A stretch of DNA of 64,000 nucleotides, from assembly GCF_001194135.2 (NCBI RefSeq), contig NC_069004.1, positions 1,143,761 through 1,207,760 on the forward strand, given 5' to 3'. Below the pieces are notes generated by a model. That model was given only the letters and a program-made list of their open reading frames with translations. It searched no databases and was not told the DNA's origin. The stretch's first letter is position 1, and each line of letters opens with the position of its first letter. Both the position numbers and the translations under genes were made by a program. This document shows positions 395 to 51,010 of the stretch, in pieces. Origin of the DNA: Octopus bimaculoides (taxonomy: Eukaryota).

Positions 395-945
395 CCACTG
401 GTCACAATGCACTTCCAATTCTTTCTCGACTGCACCACTCTTAACCATTTTGGCCTAAATCCTTTGATTTAGTTATCCTCCCATCACTATGGAGGATTCT
501 GAATGGCCTTTTCTCATCTCCTGGATATTACTTGCCAACTACAAGGATCCACCTGTCATCCGTGAACATTGCAACATGCCCAATCCACTGGATTTTGCCC
601 TTTTGGTATTCTGCGATCATTTCACTCATTCTGCTTCATTCTCAAATTATTTCATTTCGCTATCCTCTCACAACGATATTCCCAGCATGGATCTGTCCAC
701 GGCTCTTTGCGTGGTCACCAATCAATGTTCTTCCCTCTATAACCCATGTCTCACTCGTGGAAGGTTCTAGCACGTATGGGTCTTATCCAGCATTGCTTTG
801 AGCATGTTCTCTATTGAGATAAATACCTTCCATCTTGCTTATATTCTCTTTGAGAGTTCAACAGTCATGTATGCTTCAGTGCATGTTCCCTGTGTACCCC
901 AAGTAGACGTATCCCTTTACCTGCCTGACTTCATTGCTTCCCACC
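395..945 (-). mobile_element. RTE-clade LINE, 3' ORF fragment (degenerate)
   Basis: Minus-strand translation gives GYVYLG ... SETW ... VDRSMLGISL ... KIQWIGHVAMFTDDRWILVVGK*YPGDEKRP, matching the RTE C-terminal pattern W.GHV.R..D.RW...W.P...KR; interrupted by stops and frameshifts. Confidence 0.8.
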
Positions 946-1317
946 TCTATTCAGCCTTCAGTGCATAGGGTTATGTAGTGAGTCACAAAACATCAATATT
1001 TCACCATTTAAGCGAGGTCCCAGCCGTACGGTGGCCCTGTACAAACGGTCTCCCTCTCTATCATATCACGTACAGCCTGCAGTGTGTATAAAGTTGATAT
1101 TTAATGGCCAAAGTTGAAGCTGTTGATATTTTCATCATTGATTTACTGACAACATTCCCTCATCAGCTTAAATAAATTACTTGACCTTTAACGAACTCGG
1201 AAGATAAAAACTTCAGTGTCAACATCTCTTGAATTTTCATGCAAACAACATTAGATAAGCACGCACATAATTAAATTAAATAATTTGCATAAAGAGACAA
1301 ACAGTAATTTAGTATTT

Positions 1318-2885: not shown

Positions 2886-3254
2886 TACACTGCAAACAAA
2901 AACCTATAAAAACAAATCAGATGAATGAAAGAAAAACACCAATTTCTCTTCTGTGATAATATTGTGTTTGGCACTAAACACGTTTTCCTATGATCTTAGA
3001 GTTTTCAAGTCAATAAGGTCGTGTTTGTTTAAGTTCTCCAAGAACCGCCATACAGCCATGTGGCTCATGGATCAGCTTACATTTCTAAAAATAGATTTTT
3101 GGCTCCAAAGTTTAAAACCACAGCATTTGGTTTACCGTTTCAAAAGAATGCAGCGAAATATCAACTGACACAATTCCAATGTCAGTAGAATTCGAATTAG
3201 ATAATGTAATTTAGTCAGAGATATACGGAAAGGAAGAGAGAAATAATGATAATA

Positions 3255-3474
3255 ATAATAACCCTTTCTACTGTAGGCACAAGGCCTGAAATTTTGGGGG
3301 AGGGGGCCAGTTGATCACATCGACCCTAGTGCGTAACTGGTACTTAATTTATTGACCCTGAAAGGATGAAAGGAAAAGTTGACCTCAGTGGAATTTGAAC
3401 TCAGAATGTAGCAACAGACGAAATACCACCGAGCATTTCAACTGACGTGCTAATGGTTCTGCCAGCTCACCACC

Positions 3475-3480
<6 letters not shown>
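3255..3480 (-). mobile_element. tRNA-derived SINE family B (Meta-domain-like)
   Basis: Reverse complement of ctgagttcaaattcc...cctttcatcctttc.gggtc.ataaattaagtaccagt; flanked by (AAT)n on both sides. Confidence 0.75.
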
Positions 3481-3520
<40 letters not shown>

Positions 3521-3683
3521 TAATAATGATAATAATAGAAAGAGACAAAGAAAAAGAACAACAGCAAAACATTGATTGAAATAGTAGTGTTAAGTAATAT
3601 CACATAGTGACTTCAACTTCATATCCAGTTTATATTTTTAAGTGAGAGATTCAAACAAAAATTAATATAAAATAGTCACTTAC

Positions 3684-3805
3684 TGTTTTGGATCAGCTCA
3701 GGTAAGCAGGAGTCACCAGAAGATATAAACATTCAAATCAAACCATTTGTACACTCAAGAAGATAATAACACTTACCTGTAACGAGAAAAAGAAAAAAAA
3801 AACAA
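3684..3805 (-). other. Candidate recursive splice site (YnACAG|GTAAGT at 3777/3776) with a 93-nt cryptic RS-exon
   Basis: Minus strand reads ttttgtttttttttctttttctcgttacag|gtaagt; second GTAAGT donor at 3683-3678; the 93-nt interval has stops in all three phases. Confidence 0.5.
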
Positions 3806-4075
3806 AATCAATTTAAGAAATCTCACAGAACAACAGACACAGTTTGGCATGAAGGAATGTGTCTCAGATTCCCTTTATAAAAGGTACATTACAACCAAAA
3901 TGCACCGAGAGTAGAAAATTGATAGGAAACTGGAGAAAGTGAATTATGAGTAGTGATGTATTGATGAAGGTGTGAATATAACAGAAAATAGAGAAAACAT
4001 TAGGGGGGGGGGGGGTGAGGTGGATATGCAACGAGAAGAAAGAAAGAAAAAAAGAGCCATTGTTTAATCTTTTTT

Positions 4076-4089
4076 GTTACCATAGGAAC
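4076..4089. promoter_or_regulatory. RFX X-box match GTTACCATAGGAAC
   Basis: Fits GTTNCYATRGNAAC; its 3' half overlaps the head of a SINE, so it may be incidental. Confidence 0.3.
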
Positions 4090-4452
4090 AGGCATGAATG
4101 TGTGTTAAGAAGTTTGCTTCTCAATCACATGGTTCTGGGTTCAGTCCCACTGCATGGCACTTTGGGCAAGTGTCTTCTACTCGAGCCTTGGACTGACCAA
4201 AACCTGGATTTGGCAGAAGGAAACTGAAAGATGACCATCGTCTATGTGTGTGTGTGTCCCACCACTGCTTGATAACCAGTGTCGGTGTGTTTATGTCCCT
4301 GTAACCTAGTGGTTCAACAAAACAGGCAGATAGAATATGTATCACCAGCCTTAACAAAAAATAAATACTGGGGGGTCAATTCATTCAGCTAAAATTTCTT
4401 CAAGGCAGTGCCCCAGCATGGCCGTAGTCTAATGACTGAAACAAGTAAAAGT
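4086..4452 (+). mobile_element. SINE family A, near full length
   Basis: catggttctgggttcagtcccactgcatggcactttgggcaagtgtcttctac ... ccccagcatggccgtagtctaatgactgaaacaagtaaaag. Confidence 0.85.
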
Positions 4453-4539
4453 TATTTCTGTTGAAGAACTGTGTTTGCATGGGTTGGATGGAATTTGTCG
4501 GGGAACATCTGCTATGGTCAGGTGATGCATATATGACAT

Positions 4540-16551: not shown

Positions 16552-16595
<44 letters not shown>

Positions 16596-16635
16596 TATTA
16601 TTACTACTATTATTACTACTACTACTACTACTACT

Positions 16636-17040
16636 TAGACAGTGAACTGGAAGAGTCGTTAGGGAGTTGGACAAAATGCTCGGAAGCATTTCTTCTAGCT
16701 TTACACCCTGAGTTCAAATTCTGCTGAGGTCAACTTTCATCCTTTCATGATCAATACATTAAGTACCAGTCAAATATTGGGGGCTGATGTAATCGACTTA
16801 CCACCCTGCCCTCCTCTTAAATTTCAAGCCTTGTGCCTATAGTACCAACAATTATTATTTTCCACCAAGGTCATCAAATTCTACCGAGGTCAGCTCTGCC
16901 TTTCATCCTTTCGGGGTCAATAAATTAAGTACCAGTTGCATACTGGGTTTGATCTAATCGACATCCCCTCCCCACAAAATGGCTGCCCTTGTGGCAAAAT
17001 TTGAAACCAATATTATTATTATTATTATTATTATTATTGG
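16636..17040 (+). mobile_element. Tandem family B SINEs embedded in (ATT/ACT)n
   Basis: gtgaactggaagagtcgttag...ctgagttcaaattc...aagtaccagt followed by a second partial copy from ~16865; (ATT)n on both sides. Confidence 0.75.
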
Positions 17041-17749: not shown

Positions 17750-17995
17750 TTACTTGACGAGAGGAAACACTTAATTAACCAAGTGGGCCTAAATTTTCTT
17801 GAAGTTGTTTGTGAAAGTTGCTAAAGAAAGGAATGAGTTCAAATCAAATTTTTATATAAATGAATAACAGACTAATGAATTAAGTGCAAAAAAATAAAAA
17901 TAAATAAATAATTAAATTCCAAAATATCCAGTATTATTTTAACAAAGAATTAAGATTAAATTATTAATTAATATTTTATTTAAATTATATTCTTT

Positions 17996-18362
17996 TACTT
18001 CCCAACCACATGGTTCCGGGTTCAATCCCCCGGCATAGTATCTCTGGCAAGGTAAGTGGTTTCTACAATAGCCACAGACTGACCAAACTCTTGTGAGTGG
18101 ATCTGGAAGATGAAAACTGAAAGAAGCCTGTTGTGTGTGCGCGTGCGTGTGTTATTGTGTCTTTGTGTTTGTCACCTACCACTGCTTGACTACCAGTGTT
18201 GGTTTATTTATGTCCCTGCAACTTAGCAGTTCAGCAAAAGAGATCACTTGAATAAGTACCAAGCTTAAAAAGTAAGTATCAGGGTTGATCTGTTTTTGGC
18301 TAAACCCTTCAAGTAAGTGCTCCAGTATGGCCACAGTCCAATGAATGAAACAAGCACAAGAC
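17996..18362 (+). mobile_element. SINE family A copy
   Basis: cccaaccacatggttccgggttcaatccc ... ccagtatggccacagtccaatgaatgaaacaag. Confidence 0.8.
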
Positions 18363-18432: not shown

Positions 18433-18846
18433 CAACTTTACATAAAAACAAGTCAAGCTAAGCCATTCAACAAGTTACATTCAATAAAAAAAAAAGCCTA
18501 AAAAAAAAAAAACAGGAAATATTTTCCTTTTTTATTTATTTTTGAAATGCTTGGTGTTTTTGGTTTCTTTCTATTTTACTTATTTATTTATTTATTTATT
18601 TTTGTAGATTTGTGCTTCAATTAATTTTTGAAGTAATTATGAACTTGGAGGGAATTTAAACAAAATAACTAACTTTTTCAAGATTAAACTTCCTTAGACA
18701 AGTTCTTTGATATTATGTTGGGAATAAGAATTCAATTATGGTAGGGTCCTTGTACACATTTTAAACACACATACACTTATTTTATTATCCTTTTTTTGAC
18801 AATTATAATTACAGTACATTAATTCAAGTATAGTAGAGTTCTTACA

Positions 18847-19080
18847 GCCATTTTGGACAAACAGGCAGGAAGAAAGAAAGATGCCAAGGGCTGTGCCAAA
18901 CAACAACTCCTCATCAACAAAGCTGTCCTCAAGGAAGCCAAACAGCATCACTGGAACCTGTTGATTGCATTGCTGGACTATGAAAAGGCATTTGATTATG
19001 TTCCCCAACCATGGATATTACAGTCTTAAGCCTTACCAAGGTTCCAACTGCTATACTTAATGCCATTAACAGACTGATTA
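18847..19080 (+). mobile_element. Non-LTR retrotransposon RT fragment, R4/Dong-like (R2 group)
   Basis: AILDKQAGRKKDAKGCAKQQLLINKAVLKEAKQHHWNLLIALLDYEKAFDYVPQPWILQS*, matching the GC..QLLI.KA...K....NL..A..DY.KAFDSVPH.WI pattern. Confidence 0.75.
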
Positions 19081-23306: not shown

Positions 23307-24309
23307 GATGCGTTAACCTTTGTGTGGTAAACATGGAGATTACATATCTGAGCCATGGTTCCATTCAATTGGCCCTTCAGTCAACTCATGTGTCAGCTGT
23401 TGTGTATTCTAATTTAGGGCTGACCGAATAAACGGCTCTCTCTTGTCTTATATAAAGGCAGGACATGTGGATCTCTGTAGTCTTACATATACAAACACTA
23501 AATGGTCTTGACTGGAATAACTCTGATCATATGGCAAGGTCAATCAAAGCTGATACGGGGTCGTCATTGTTTAAACCACCCCTCACCAACAACAACTCCT
23601 GAGGGGACTGTTGCATGGTTGCTCAACCAATTAGAAATAGCAGCCAAATCTTTCTTAAATCAATCATACCTCACTATCTTAAATACAGGAGGGACAAATT
23701 ACACGATGTATTCCAAGATACAACAGCAAACCCATCCTGCCAAATCTTTGGAATTCTACAACATATAAACCTCCTAGAATGTAGTGACCTCAATTACAAC
23801 CCCTAATAATCAAAACTTCCTGCATTCTTCACCATTTATCTTACCACAGAGCTGTGCCCTTCTCCTTTAATGATCTTTGCAACTCAGACAGAACTTGCTC
23901 ACTGGATATTGATCCAACATAAACACACTCAAATCAACCTCCTGTAGATACATCAACTTTATCTTCCCATCAAGGCTCCAAGCTGTATCCCCTAATTTTT
24001 TTTCCTTACTCAGTTCTCTCTCTTTCCAGTGACTTCCCTCCCGATTCCTCTCCTTGACTAGGGTTTTCCTTTCAAAAACATCCAACTTAACCTGCAATAC
24101 TTTCAAGCTAAATTACTTACCCCCTGCAATTTCAGTTATTCCTAGCCCTACAGAAGGGCCTGATAATGTTGTGATTATTTTCCCCACTTTCTGAGAATGA
24201 ATGGGGAGGGGAGGGGCAATAAGGAAAAAAATACCTACCCCCTAATCCTGTCAATTAATTTTGACCGTAACCCTTAACCACTAGTTTGATGTAGTTGAGA
24301 CTAGTCAGC

Positions 24310-26836: not shown

Positions 26837-27154
26837 CCCATCTGAAAAAATTATAGGCTGAGCCGTGGTTGTGCTTATTTCCTGGACAGGAATGTCCTCT
26901 TTAATTTCTTCGTTCAGCGAAGAGGGTGTTGTCACATTGGAGCCGTTGGCAGGGCTATCTGGCGTTTTCTTTTCAGCAGCTGTAGGGACTTGTCTTTTAC
27001 GCCGGGAATTGTCTCCGAACTGGAGTGATTTGTTCTCATCACAATCGTCAACAACGTTGAACATGGAAGTTTTAACACGGGGCTTCACAGGACTGGATGT
27101 CGGCATAAAGAACATGGGTTCCGAAGTGCCATTCTTGGACGGAGTCCCAGACAT
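26837..27154 (-). CDS. First coding exon of an unidentified gene (106 aa, MSGTPSKNGTSEPMFFMPTSSPVKPR...QPIIFSDG)
   Basis: Non-repetitive S/T/P/E-rich protein-like composition; in-frame upstream stop with no AG between it and the ATG; exactly 318 nt to a phase-0 donor GGG|GTGAGC, after which the ORF decays into AT-rich intron-like sequence. Confidence 0.6.
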
Positions 27155-32549: not shown

Positions 32550-33110
32550 GAATCTTCAGACTTTGGCAAAAAGGCTTATGCGTGCCAACGCTTGGAGGCA
32601 TGGCACATGAAGAGAGAGAACTGATGTGCAGAACTTTGGATGTGTGTATAAATTAACATTTTTTTTTAGTGACTGAAATTAAACATCTCATTACCATATT
32701 CTTGAAATATGCCAATGTTTTAGAATAGAAGCAGCCAAAATGGGGTTCATGAAAATGGCCTCTGGAATAACTTTACCTGACAAGATGCATAAATCAAAGA
32801 AAAAGGAGTCTCTCCTTGTCAATCCGCTACTTCTTCATATTGAGATTACAGCTCCAGTACTATGGACATTTGGTTAGAATGTCAGAGGGAAGAATCACAA
32901 AAGGGATTCTTCAAACTGAGCCAACTGGAAGGAGACTTAGATGGAGACCCAGGATGAGATGGTTGGATAATATCCACAATCTCAGTCGGTCAGACTTGGG
33001 AATCTAACCAGCAACTGTAATAACTGATAGGACCCTATGGAGGAGGTGCCTGAGGACTCTCCCACCATGACCCTTCAAAGAATAGGGGACAGAGAAGATG
33101 GATGAATTGA
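32550..33110 (+). mobile_element. RTE-clade LINE 3' fragment
   Basis: RIEAAKMGFMKMASGITLPDKM...NPLLLHIE (frameshift) LQYYGHLVRMSEGRITKGILQTEPTGRRLRWRPRMRWLDNI. Confidence 0.85.
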
Positions 33111-46004: not shown

Positions 46005-46180
<176 letters not shown>

Positions 46181-46324
46181 GGCGGTGAGCTGGCAGAATC
46201 GTTAGCATGTCGGGGGAAATGCTTAGCAGTATTTCACCTGTCACTGCATTCTGAGTTCAAATTCCACCGAGGTCAACTATGCCTTTCATCCTTTTGGGGT
46301 TGATAAATTAAGTACCAGTGAAAC
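46181..46324 (+). mobile_element. SINE family B, well preserved head
   Basis: GGCGGTGAGCTGGCAGAATCGTTAG (A-box-like) ... GAGTTCAAATTCC (B box) ... gcctttcatccttttggggttgataaattaagtaccagt; another good copy at 49055-49265. Confidence 0.85.
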
Positions 46325-50574: not shown

Positions 50575-51010
50575 GACAGGCTTCCACACAGTTTCCATCA
50601 ACCAAATCCCCGCACAAGGCTTTGCTTGGCCTGAGGTTATAGCAGAAGATATTTGCCTAAGGTAGCATGCTTCTCAACCACATGGTTCTGAATTCAGTCC
50701 CACTGCGTGGCACCTTGGGAAAGTGTCTTCTACTATAGCCTCAAGATGACCAGAGCCTTGTGAGTGGATTTGGTAGATGGAAACTGAATGAAGTCCACTG
50801 CATGTTTGTGTGCATGTCCCATTACCGTTTGACAACCGGTGTTGGTTTGTTTATGTCCCCATGACTTAGCAGTTCAGCAAGAGGCCAATAGAATAAGTAC
50901 CGGACTTACAAAAAAGAAAAAAGTACTGGAGTCGATTCATTTGACTAAAAATTCTTCAAGGAGGTGCCCCAGCATGGCCGCAGTCTAAAGACAGAAACAA
51001 GTAAAAGATA
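50575..51010. mobile_element. Head-to-head family A SINEs (- 50575-50665, + 50666-51010)
   Basis: cagtttccatcaaccaaatcc...tgaggttatagcagaaga versus tcttctactatagcctca...ggatttggtagatggaaactg. Confidence 0.8.

What the first reader, a model, noticed from the sequence alone, without database searches (positions are those of the whole stretch)
3678..3810. Recursive splice site with a stop-containing RS-exon in a long minus-strand intron
Seen: the minus strand has a ~25-nt almost pure pyrimidine tract, ACAG, then a perfect GTAAGT immediately after; a second perfect GTAAGT follows 93 nt downstream, and the interval has stops in all three phases. Known: this is the architecture of Drosophila ratchet points and vertebrate RS-sites/RS-exons (3'ss fused to a 5'ss, defined by a downstream cryptic donor), enriched in long neuronal introns. 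Inference: the gene whose coding exon ends at 26837 (23 kb upstream, same strand) removes a long intron in steps. I am not aware of recursive splicing being characterised in cephalopods.
Basis: partly seen in the sequence, partly recalled or inferred. Interest (0 to 1): 0.72.

Follow-up and report, generated by a model that had tools for sequence, protein, structure and literature searches.

The report
Candidate recursive splice site, long intron
A textbook "acceptor fused to donor" splice motif sits 23 kb inside what looks like a very long intron of a conserved mollusc gene, so the intron may be removed in two steps as in flies, but only the sequence supports this and no RNA evidence could be checked.

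Summary
On the minus strand there is a 25-nt tract (23/25 pyrimidines), then ACAG ending at 3777, GTAAGT at 3776-3771, a second GTAAGT at 3683-3678, and stops in all three frames of the 93 nt between. Of 361 AG|GT sites in the window (both strands) it is the clear top scorer. It joins the second-best acceptor to the best donor. Such a site arises by chance in about 1% of windows, so hundreds are expected genome-wide. It lies in unique sequence between two repeats. The exon ending at 26837 is real: it is a coding exon conserved in molluscs, with a conserved phase-0 donor. No further exon was recognised in the 26.8 kb downstream. The site has fly ratchet-point features: TT at -5/-6, a branch-point-like TTGAT 31 nt upstream, short stop-filled downstream "exons" of 60 or 93 nt, and a regenerated donor stronger than the downstream ones. 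Use in vivo, conservation in cephalopods and minus-strand transcription at 3.7 kb could not be tested. Verdict: a good candidate of a known kind, about 45% likely functional; a chance, unused motif is almost as likely.

The parts
3807..3811 (-). Branch-point-like TTGAT (A at 3808), 31 nt upstream of the acceptor G. No AG lies between it and the acceptor.
   Evidence: Read; fits the yUnAy consensus (general knowledge). Inferred, not tested.
3781..3805 (-). Polypyrimidine tract, 23/25 pyrimidines, with TT at positions -5/-6.
   Evidence: By an approximate PWM the acceptor ranks 2nd of 7147 AGs in the window. TT at -5/-6 is found in 196 of 197 fly ratchet points (bioRxiv 10.1101/006163).
3777..3780 (-). 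ACAG, the 3' splice-site core; the putative recursive acceptor ends at 3777.
3771..3776 (-). GTAAGT directly abutting the acceptor; the putative recursive 5' splice site. After ligation to an exon ending in GGG it would read GGG|GTAAGT.
   Evidence: Ranks 1st of 7471 GTs in its genomic context. The regenerated form scores 10.1, above the exon-1 donor at 9.75.
3684..3776 (-). Putative cryptic RS-exon of 93 nt (60 nt, 3717-3776, if the GTGACT donor at 3716 is used). Stops in all three frames.
   Evidence: Unique sequence, with no other copy in the window.
3711..3716 (-). Alternative downstream donor CTG|GTGACT, 60 nt after the acceptor.
   Evidence: PWM 7.1.
3678..3683 (-). Downstream donor ACA|GTAAGT, 93 nt after the acceptor.
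   Evidence: PWM 6.5; weakened by A at -1.
26837..27154 (-). Upstream coding exon (106 codons from the ATG), ending in phase 0. Its donor GTGAGC is at 26836-26831, 23,060 nt upstream of the candidate acceptor.
   Evidence: Homologues in Lottia, Patella, Nucella, Elysia and unnamed assemblies. In nearly all of the aligned species the called ORFs read through a GT (Val codon) at the same position.
3242..3537 (+). Flanking repeat with an (AAT)n tail. It bounds the unique block 3538-4083 that holds the site.
4084..4454 (+). Flanking SINE-like repeat with many copies in the window. It bounds the unique block on the other side.

Best explanation
This is a recursive splice site (ratchet point with a cryptic RS-exon) in the long intron that follows the conserved coding exon 27154-26837 on the minus strand. 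Proposed mechanism follows; every step is inferred, and only the sequence elements are shown. (1) U2AF and U2 recognise the very strong acceptor: TTGAT branch point, a 25-nt U-rich tract with UU at -5/-6, and CAG. U1 binds a downstream donor at +60 or +93, which defines a short exon. (2) The upstream exon, ending in GGG, is ligated to 3776. This removes about 23 kb as a first lariat and creates GGG|GUAAGU. (3) The regenerated donor is stronger than either downstream donor and wins the competition. The 60/93-nt stop-containing segment is therefore removed with the rest of the intron and leaves no trace in the mRNA. If the regenerated donor lost the competition, the segment would be included, giving a stop 13 codons in and probably a decay-targeted transcript.
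For: The motif is exact and is the outlier of the window. It ranks first among 361 AG|GT sites with a combined score of 15.8 against 10.4 for the next, and re-pairing gives p about 0.011. The acceptor ranks 2nd of 7147 and the donor 1st of 7471. It has TT at -5/-6 and a prominent pyrimidine tract, as in 196 of 197 fly ratchet points. Two donors lie within 100 nt, and the segment between is stop-filled, matching the cryptic RS-exon description (PMC8605326). The regenerated donor scores 10.1, against 7.1 and 6.5 for the downstream donors, the relation that gives skipping in flies. The upstream exon is genuine and conserved in molluscs, with a conserved donor. The first segment would be 23,060 nt, inside the fly range of 2.6-63.6 kb. 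No conserved or domain-encoding exon was found in the 26.8 kb downstream. No conserved second exon lies within 10 kb in Lottia or Patella, so the intron is long in relatives too. The site is in unique sequence, not inside a repeat family seen in the window. An ordinary exon that merely happens to start with GTAAGT is much rarer a priori than either a selected site or a chance motif (my estimate).
Against: There are no junction reads, lariats, saw-tooth coverage or any other RNA data. No cephalopod sequence was available, so conservation, the strongest fly criterion, is untested. The downstream exon of the intron is not in the window, so minus-strand transcription through 3.7 kb is inferred. 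A 70-nt candidate exon at 24190-24121 could mean the site lies in the next intron instead. The chance rate of about 0.01 per window means hundreds of equal motifs genome-wide. In humans only nine fully suppressed intronic ratchet points were noted definitively. No sense-strand AGGTAAGT was found in the first 10 kb of the orthologous intron in five other molluscs. The PWMs are generic and were written from general knowledge, not trained on this species.
Confidence: 0.45

Rival explanations
1. This is a chance motif that is not used, or is used only at noise level. In an AT-rich, pyrimidine-skewed stretch, a T-rich run happens to precede CAGGTAAGT. The run may be the antisense of an A-rich tail or low-complexity patch on the + strand. 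The site is either ignored or actively repressed.
For: The expected frequency is 0.008-0.011 per window, which means hundreds of sites in a genome of a few gigabases. The minus strand is rich in pyrimidine tracts generally: 17 AGs with at least 18/20 Y, against 3 on the + strand. A 26-nt near-copy of the tract lies 249 nt upstream (3778-3803 vs 4027-4053) without an AG|GT, so the tract may have a neutral local origin. Pseudo-exons with moderate sites are common in the window, 81 at relaxed thresholds. The + strand also shows a chance CAG|GTAAGC inside the same 93 nt.
Against: Several independent features coincide: the best donor on the second-best acceptor, TT at -5/-6, a branch point at -31 with an AG-free zone, and two downstream donors within 100 nt. 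I estimate a donor of that strength occurs about once per 550 nt (233 in 128 kb). The site is on the sense strand downstream of a real exon.
Confidence: 0.4
2. This is an ordinary alternative exon of 60 or 93 nt: a poison cassette exon of this gene, or a non-coding or UTR exon of another minus-strand transcript. It would be spliced in the usual way, with the GTAAGT at its start being incidental.
For: A strong acceptor plus donors at +60 and +93 is simply exon architecture. Stops in every frame fit a non-coding or poison exon. In mammals thousands of expressed exons begin with a donor-like sequence (PMC8605326 and PMC6224609).
Against: An exon starting with the full GTAAGT by accident is rare; I estimate under 1 in 1000 exons. 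Both downstream donors are weaker than the regenerated one, which predicts skipping rather than inclusion. The 93 nt shows no coding potential and no homology.
Confidence: 0.1
3. This is a cryptic exon created by a decayed retroposon in antisense orientation, as in Alu exonisation. The + strand A-rich run 3782-3810 would be the tail of an element whose body (about 3580-3781) supplies the AG and the donors.
For: The + strand reads ...CTGTAACGAGAAAAAGAAAAAAAAAACAAAATCA, an A-rich tail-like run. The neighbouring repeat at 3242-3537 also ends in an A/T-rich tail.
Against: There is no other copy of 3538-4083 in the window, although abundant families recur many times. No convincing target-site duplication was seen; the best direct repeat is 32 nt at 72%. 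No tRNA-like or Rfam match was found. This rival concerns origin and does not exclude use as a recursive site.
Confidence: 0.05

Closest known systems
Drosophila intronic ratchet points with cryptic RS-exons (Hatton 1998; Burnette 2005; Duff 2015; Joseph 2018; Pai 2018)
   Same: Both have a juxtaposed strong acceptor and donor around AG|GT, (Y)n-CAG|GTAAGT. Both have TT at -5/-6 and a prominent pyrimidine tract. Both sit tens of kb into a long intron; the 23-kb segment here is within the fly range. Both have a short downstream segment bounded by a weaker donor and full of stops.
   Different: The putative RS-exon is 60 or 93 nt, against about 50 nt typical in flies. Conservation and use are unknown here, whereas fly sites are ultraconserved and backed by junction, lariat and saw-tooth data. 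The lineage is a mollusc, where none has been described.
Vertebrate recursive sites / RS-exons in long neuronal genes (Sibley 2015; Blazquez 2018)
   Same: Both involve definition of an RS-exon by a downstream 5' splice site. In both, the regenerated and downstream donors compete, and inclusion would introduce a premature stop.
   Different: The vertebrate examples lie in introns over 150 kb. Only nine fully suppressed intronic sites were noted definitively, so a motif alone predicts use poorly there. The gene here is an uncharacterised mollusc gene of unknown expression.
Poison cassette exons and intronic pseudo-exons
   Same: Both are short stop-containing segments flanked by good splice sites inside a long intron.
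   Different: These do not require a donor fused to the acceptor. Here the fused site is the strongest donor in the window, which an ordinary pseudo-exon would not need.

Membership tests
Intronic ratchet point / cryptic RS-exon (recursive splicing) | [quoted passage not shown] | tested here: met
   TTTTTTTTCTTTTTCTCGTTACAG|GTAAGT. It is the top of 361 AGGT sites, with acceptor rank 2 of 7147 and donor rank 1 of 7471.
Intronic ratchet point / cryptic RS-exon (recursive splicing) | Prominent pyrimidine tract with TT at -5/-6 (196 of 197 fly sites) | tested here: met
   Positions -5 and -6 are T and T, and 19/20 positions upstream are pyrimidines.
Intronic ratchet point / cryptic RS-exon (recursive splicing) | Lies in sense orientation inside a long intron (flies: over 11 kb) | tested here: inconclusive
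   The site is 23,060 nt downstream of the donor of a conserved same-strand exon. No exon was recognised in between or further downstream. However, the 3' exon of the intron is outside the window, and a possible 70-nt exon at 24190-24121 is unresolved.
Intronic ratchet point / cryptic RS-exon (recursive splicing) | Short downstream cryptic exon bounded by a 5' splice site, out of frame or stop-containing | tested here: met
   Donors lie at +60 (GTGACT) and +93 (GTAAGT), with stops in all frames.
Intronic ratchet point / cryptic RS-exon (recursive splicing) | Regenerated donor stronger than the RS-exon donor (gives skipping) | tested here: met
   GGG|GTAAGT scores 10.1, against 7.1 and 6.5 by an approximate generic PWM. 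This is indicative only.
Intronic ratchet point / cryptic RS-exon (recursive splicing) | Evolutionary conservation of the SA|SD motif above the flanking intron | not testable with these tools
   No cephalopod sequence was found in any reachable collection. The one metagenome hit, L004, shares only the 21-mer.
Intronic ratchet point / cryptic RS-exon (recursive splicing) | Splicing intermediates: exon-to-site junction reads, recursive lariats, saw-tooth nascent coverage | not testable with these tools
   No RNA-seq data are accessible.
Expressed cassette / poison exon | Presence of the segment in mature transcripts | not testable with these tools
   No transcript data. No database protein contains exon 1 joined to anything downstream.

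The most novel reading that the evidence does not exclude
The site is a functional zero-nucleotide recursive splice site in a cephalopod. That would be the first outside insects and vertebrates. It would suggest that stepwise removal of very long introns through (Y)n-CAG|GTAAGT ratchet points with UU at -5/-6 is ancestral to bilaterians, or evolves repeatedly wherever introns become very long.
Probability: 0.4. Interest if true: 0.55.

Novelty: new member of a known kind. Interest (0 to 1): 0.36.

Why it matters
Recursive splicing is documented in Drosophila (hundreds of sites) and in vertebrates (a handful of fully suppressed intronic sites). I found no report for molluscs or cephalopods. Cephalopod genomes have very long introns and large nervous systems. 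A validated site would extend the mechanism to a third major animal lineage. It would also give a concrete locus for asking whether long-intron genomes rely on ratchet points for splicing accuracy. One unvalidated motif does not establish that. Its value is as a cheap, precise test target: one junction, 26837^3776.

Tried and rejected
(1) A word-indexed protein search with the exon-1 peptide found nothing. The exhaustive HMMER search then found mollusc homologues, and a profile search found 33, all short first-exon read-through ORFs. None gave the rest of the protein or the identity of the gene.

(2) I looked up genomic contexts. Lottia (L001), Patella (L005) and three ENA assemblies (L006-L008) were obtained. 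P0016 and P0023 were not on record. The Logan contigs for P0005 and P0044 gave no spliced product; L009 (P0044) was read and the ORF runs through the donor.

(3) I searched for a conserved second exon by translated comparison of Lottia, Patella and the window. Only exon 1 matched.

(4) I scanned the orthologous introns for ratchet-like motifs. There is no sense-strand AGGTAAGT within 10 kb in five molluscs. Only weak look-alikes turned up, at L001:12978 and L008:10838. This is uninformative for a site 23 kb into a much larger intron.

(5) A metagenome scan with the 21-mer across the site gave one hit, L004. Its flanks are unrelated, so it is a chance match.

(6) A Pfam scan of all unique minus-strand ORFs of at least 28 aa between 1 and 26.9 kb gave no family. 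Pfam on exon 1 and its homologues also gave nothing.

(7) Rfam and tRNA scans of the whole window found nothing.

(8) I tested whether the site sits in a roughly 245-nt tandem repeat, as direct-repeat spacings suggested. This was rejected: only a 26-nt A-rich stretch is shared.

(9) Strand composition skew as a marker of transcription direction was weak and inconsistent in unique sequence, so I did not use it.

(10) I ran no further search on a concatenated ORF query, because the expected yield was low.

Full report
What is there. Read on the minus strand, the sequence is ...AAATTGATTTTGTTTTTTTTTTCTTTTTCTCGTTACAG|GTAAGTGTTATT... The AG ends at 3777 and GTAAGT occupies 3776-3771. The 25 nt before ACAG (3805-3781) are 23/25 pyrimidines, and positions -5 to -24 are 19/20 pyrimidines. 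A second GTAAGT lies at 3683-3678, 93 nt after the first. The 93 nt between carry stops in all three frames. In phase 0, the phase left by the upstream exon, the reading is VSVIIFLSVQMV followed by a stop (TGA at 3740-3738). A further donor-like CTG|GTGACT lies at +60 (3716-3711). A branch-point-like TTGAT (A at 3808) lies 31 nt upstream of the acceptor, with no AG in between.

Is it more than chance? AGGTAAGT occurs three times in the window on both strands and once on the minus strand. Only this copy has a pyrimidine tract (21/24, against 15 and 8). Of 7137 AG dinucleotides, 20 have at least 18/20 upstream pyrimidines and 3 are followed by GTAAGT, so about 0.008 such sites are expected per window. 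I also ranked sites with approximate generic splice-site matrices. These came from general knowledge, not from this species, and were used only for ranking inside the window. The acceptor is 2nd of 7147 and the donor 1st of 7471. Among the 361 AG|GT sites the combined score is 15.8 against 10.4 for the runner-up. Randomly re-pairing acceptor and donor halves reached the observed value in 221 of 20000 trials, p about 0.011. The tool's own dinucleotide shuffles agree in order of magnitude. The site is thus a real outlier for one window. At about 0.01 per 64 kb, though, a genome of a few gigabases would hold several hundred equally good sites by chance. The motif alone cannot prove function.

Surroundings. 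Self-comparison of the window shows the site in a 546-bp unique block, 3538-4083. On one side is a repeat with an (AAT)n tail (3242-3537). On the other is a SINE-like element with many copies (4084-4454). So the motif does not belong to an abundant repeat family. Direct-repeat spacings of about 245 nt hinted at a tandem structure. Pairwise alignment showed only one shared 26-nt A-rich stretch on the + strand, 3778-3803 against 4027-4053. The second copy lacks the AG|GT. This may reflect a neutral local origin of the tract. Rfam and tRNA scans were empty.

The gene. The ORF 27154-26837 on the minus strand ends in GGG|GTGAGC, in phase 0. A word-indexed search found nothing. An exhaustive HMMER search and then a profile search found 33 relatives. 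The named ones are all from molluscs: Lottia gigantea XP_009052061, Patella caerulea, Nucella lapillus and Elysia species. They share the motif DFFxPxPxP(K)PRVKxSxFxVVPDAFxxKxLxFTGDxRR. All are short "hypothetical proteins". In the alignment their similarity stops at the same column, and in nearly all of them a Val codon (GTN, often followed by AGY) comes next. That is the signature of ORF callers reading through a conserved 5' splice site. One unannotated contig (L009) was checked directly and runs through the donor into unrelated sequence. The exon is therefore a genuine, conserved first coding exon with a conserved phase-0 donor. The family has no Pfam match, and the gene's identity and expression remain unknown. 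No cephalopod relative was found in the protein collections searched, so the Octopus attribution is unverified. The source is a mollusc not represented there.

Is the site in that exon's intron? In Lottia and Patella, translated comparison found no conserved second exon within 10 kb downstream, so the intron is long in relatives with smaller genomes. In the window, none of the 154 unique minus-strand ORFs of at least 28 aa between 1 and 26.9 kb matched any Pfam family. Nothing there matched the mollusc loci except exon 1. One candidate small exon exists: 24190-24121, 70 nt, ctcag|AAAG...CAGGGG|gtaagt, open in phase 0. Its openness is only about a 1-in-5 event. If it were real, the site would lie in the following intron, and the ligated junction would still read GGG|GTAAGT. 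The exon that closes the intron is not in the window. Location of the site in a sense intron over 20 kb long is therefore likely but inferred. Strand composition skews were too weak to help.

Comparison with known recursive sites. Fly ratchet points are juxtaposed acceptor and donor motifs. [quoted passage not shown] They lie in introns of 11-133 kb that are removed in segments of 2.6-63.6 kb (mean 18 kb), and they are much better conserved than other AG|GT sites (bioRxiv 10.1101/006163; PMC6110457). They need a short cryptic RS-exon of about 50 nt with its own downstream donor. That RS-exon is poorly conserved and usually out of frame or stop-containing. It is skipped because the regenerated ratchet donor out-competes the RS-exon donor (PMC8605326). 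The candidate meets every criterion that sequence can show. It has TT at -5/-6 and a 23,060-nt first segment. It has stop-filled 60- or 93-nt downstream segments. Its regenerated donor GGG|GTAAGT (10.1) is stronger than the downstream donors (7.1 and 6.5) and even than the exon's own donor (9.75). The two decisive criteria, conservation and splicing intermediates, could not be tested.

Weighing. An ordinary exon that begins with the full GTAAGT by accident is rarer than either a selected ratchet point or a chance motif, so the real contest is between those two. Several partly independent features favour selection. The motif is an outlier. It is on the sense strand behind a real exon. It has the UU at -5/-6, a branch point with an AG-free zone, and two donors within 100 nt. 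Donors of that strength occur about once per 550 nt in the window (233 in 128 kb). Against selection stand the genome-wide chance count and the human experience, where only nine fully suppressed intronic sites were noted definitively. There is also a complete lack of expression or conservation data, and the downstream end of the intron is unseen. Scans of the first 10 kb of the orthologous intron in five other molluscs found no comparable sense-strand site. This says little about a site 23 kb into a larger intron. My estimates are about 0.45 for a functional recursive site, 0.40 for an unused chance motif, 0.10 for an ordinary alternative or poison exon, and 0.05 for a retroposon-derived cryptic exon as a distinct case.

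Novelty and interest. No paper in the searched library links recursive splicing to octopus. The single hit for "cephalopod" is an unrelated pair of references. If validated, this would be a new member of a known kind in a new lineage. That would be useful but not surprising, because the mechanism uses only generic spliceosome signals and is already known in both protostomes and deuterostomes. It is cheaply testable with one junction. Interest is 0.36.

Noticed in passing
window 26837-27154 (-): First coding exon of an uncharacterised protein family found here only in molluscs among named sources. The shared motif is DFFxPxPxP(K)PRVKxSxFxVVPDAF..KxLxFTGDxRR, with no Pfam match. The phase-0 donor is conserved. 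Annotated relatives are only short 'hypothetical' first-exon models, so gene predictors seem to miss the downstream exons across a long intron.
   Followed up: partly
window 24121-24190 (-): Candidate 70-nt exon, open in phase 0 (KVGKIITTLSGPSVGLGITEIAG), with a good acceptor (ccattcattctcag) and the donor CAGGGG|GTAAGT. It could be exon 2 of the same gene. No homology was found.
   Followed up: partly
window 3778-3803 and 4027-4053 (+): A 26-nt near-duplicate, TGYAACGAGAA followed by an A-rich run, i.e. the complement of the pyrimidine tract, lies 249 nt away. The second copy has no AG|GT, and the sequence between the two copies is not similar.
   Followed up: yes
window 28560 (+): A second acceptor-donor juxtaposition on the other strand, ctcccccccctctctcacacag|GTATGT (19/20 pyrimidines). 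It is the runner-up among AG|GT sites and lies in the GC-richer low-complexity region upstream of exon 1.
   Followed up: no
window 3699-3707 (+): CAG|GTAAGC on the + strand inside the 93-nt interval (complement of GCTTACCTG). It shows that strong donor-like strings also arise by chance here.
   Followed up: no
window 18823-19026 (+); 32771-33004 (+); about 450-1000 (-): Decayed LINE-like fragments. The first gives a weak RVT_1 match (E 0.038, below the cut-off). The others resemble reverse-transcriptase C-terminal regions by eye only.
   Followed up: partly
window 4084-4454, 50668-51010, 1323-1691, 17994-18360; also 3242-3537, 46118-46319, 16575-16859: Two interspersed repeat families with several copies each, one with an (AAT)n tail. 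About 35% of the window is repeated within itself or is assembly gap; the repeats include many (TA)n, (CA)n and (AAT)n microsatellites.
   Followed up: partly
window about 13.8-14.8, 27.76-28.1, 33.2-33.75, 47.65-48.4 and 62.5-63.4 kb: Runs of N (3605 bases in all). These assembly gaps could hide exons or repeats, including one just upstream of exon 1.
   Followed up: no
L004 737-757 (-): A JGI metagenome contig shares the exact 21-mer TTACAGGTAAGTGTTATTATC but nothing on either side, so it is a chance match.
   Followed up: yes
L001 12978 (+); L008 10838 (+): Weak ratchet-like sites early in the orthologous intron: Lottia tttttgtaag|GTAAGG, 2.1 kb in, and an unnamed mollusc cccccctttcag|GTAAGA, 0.56 kb in. 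Neither has a full motif, and the Lottia site has no counterpart in Patella.
   Followed up: partly
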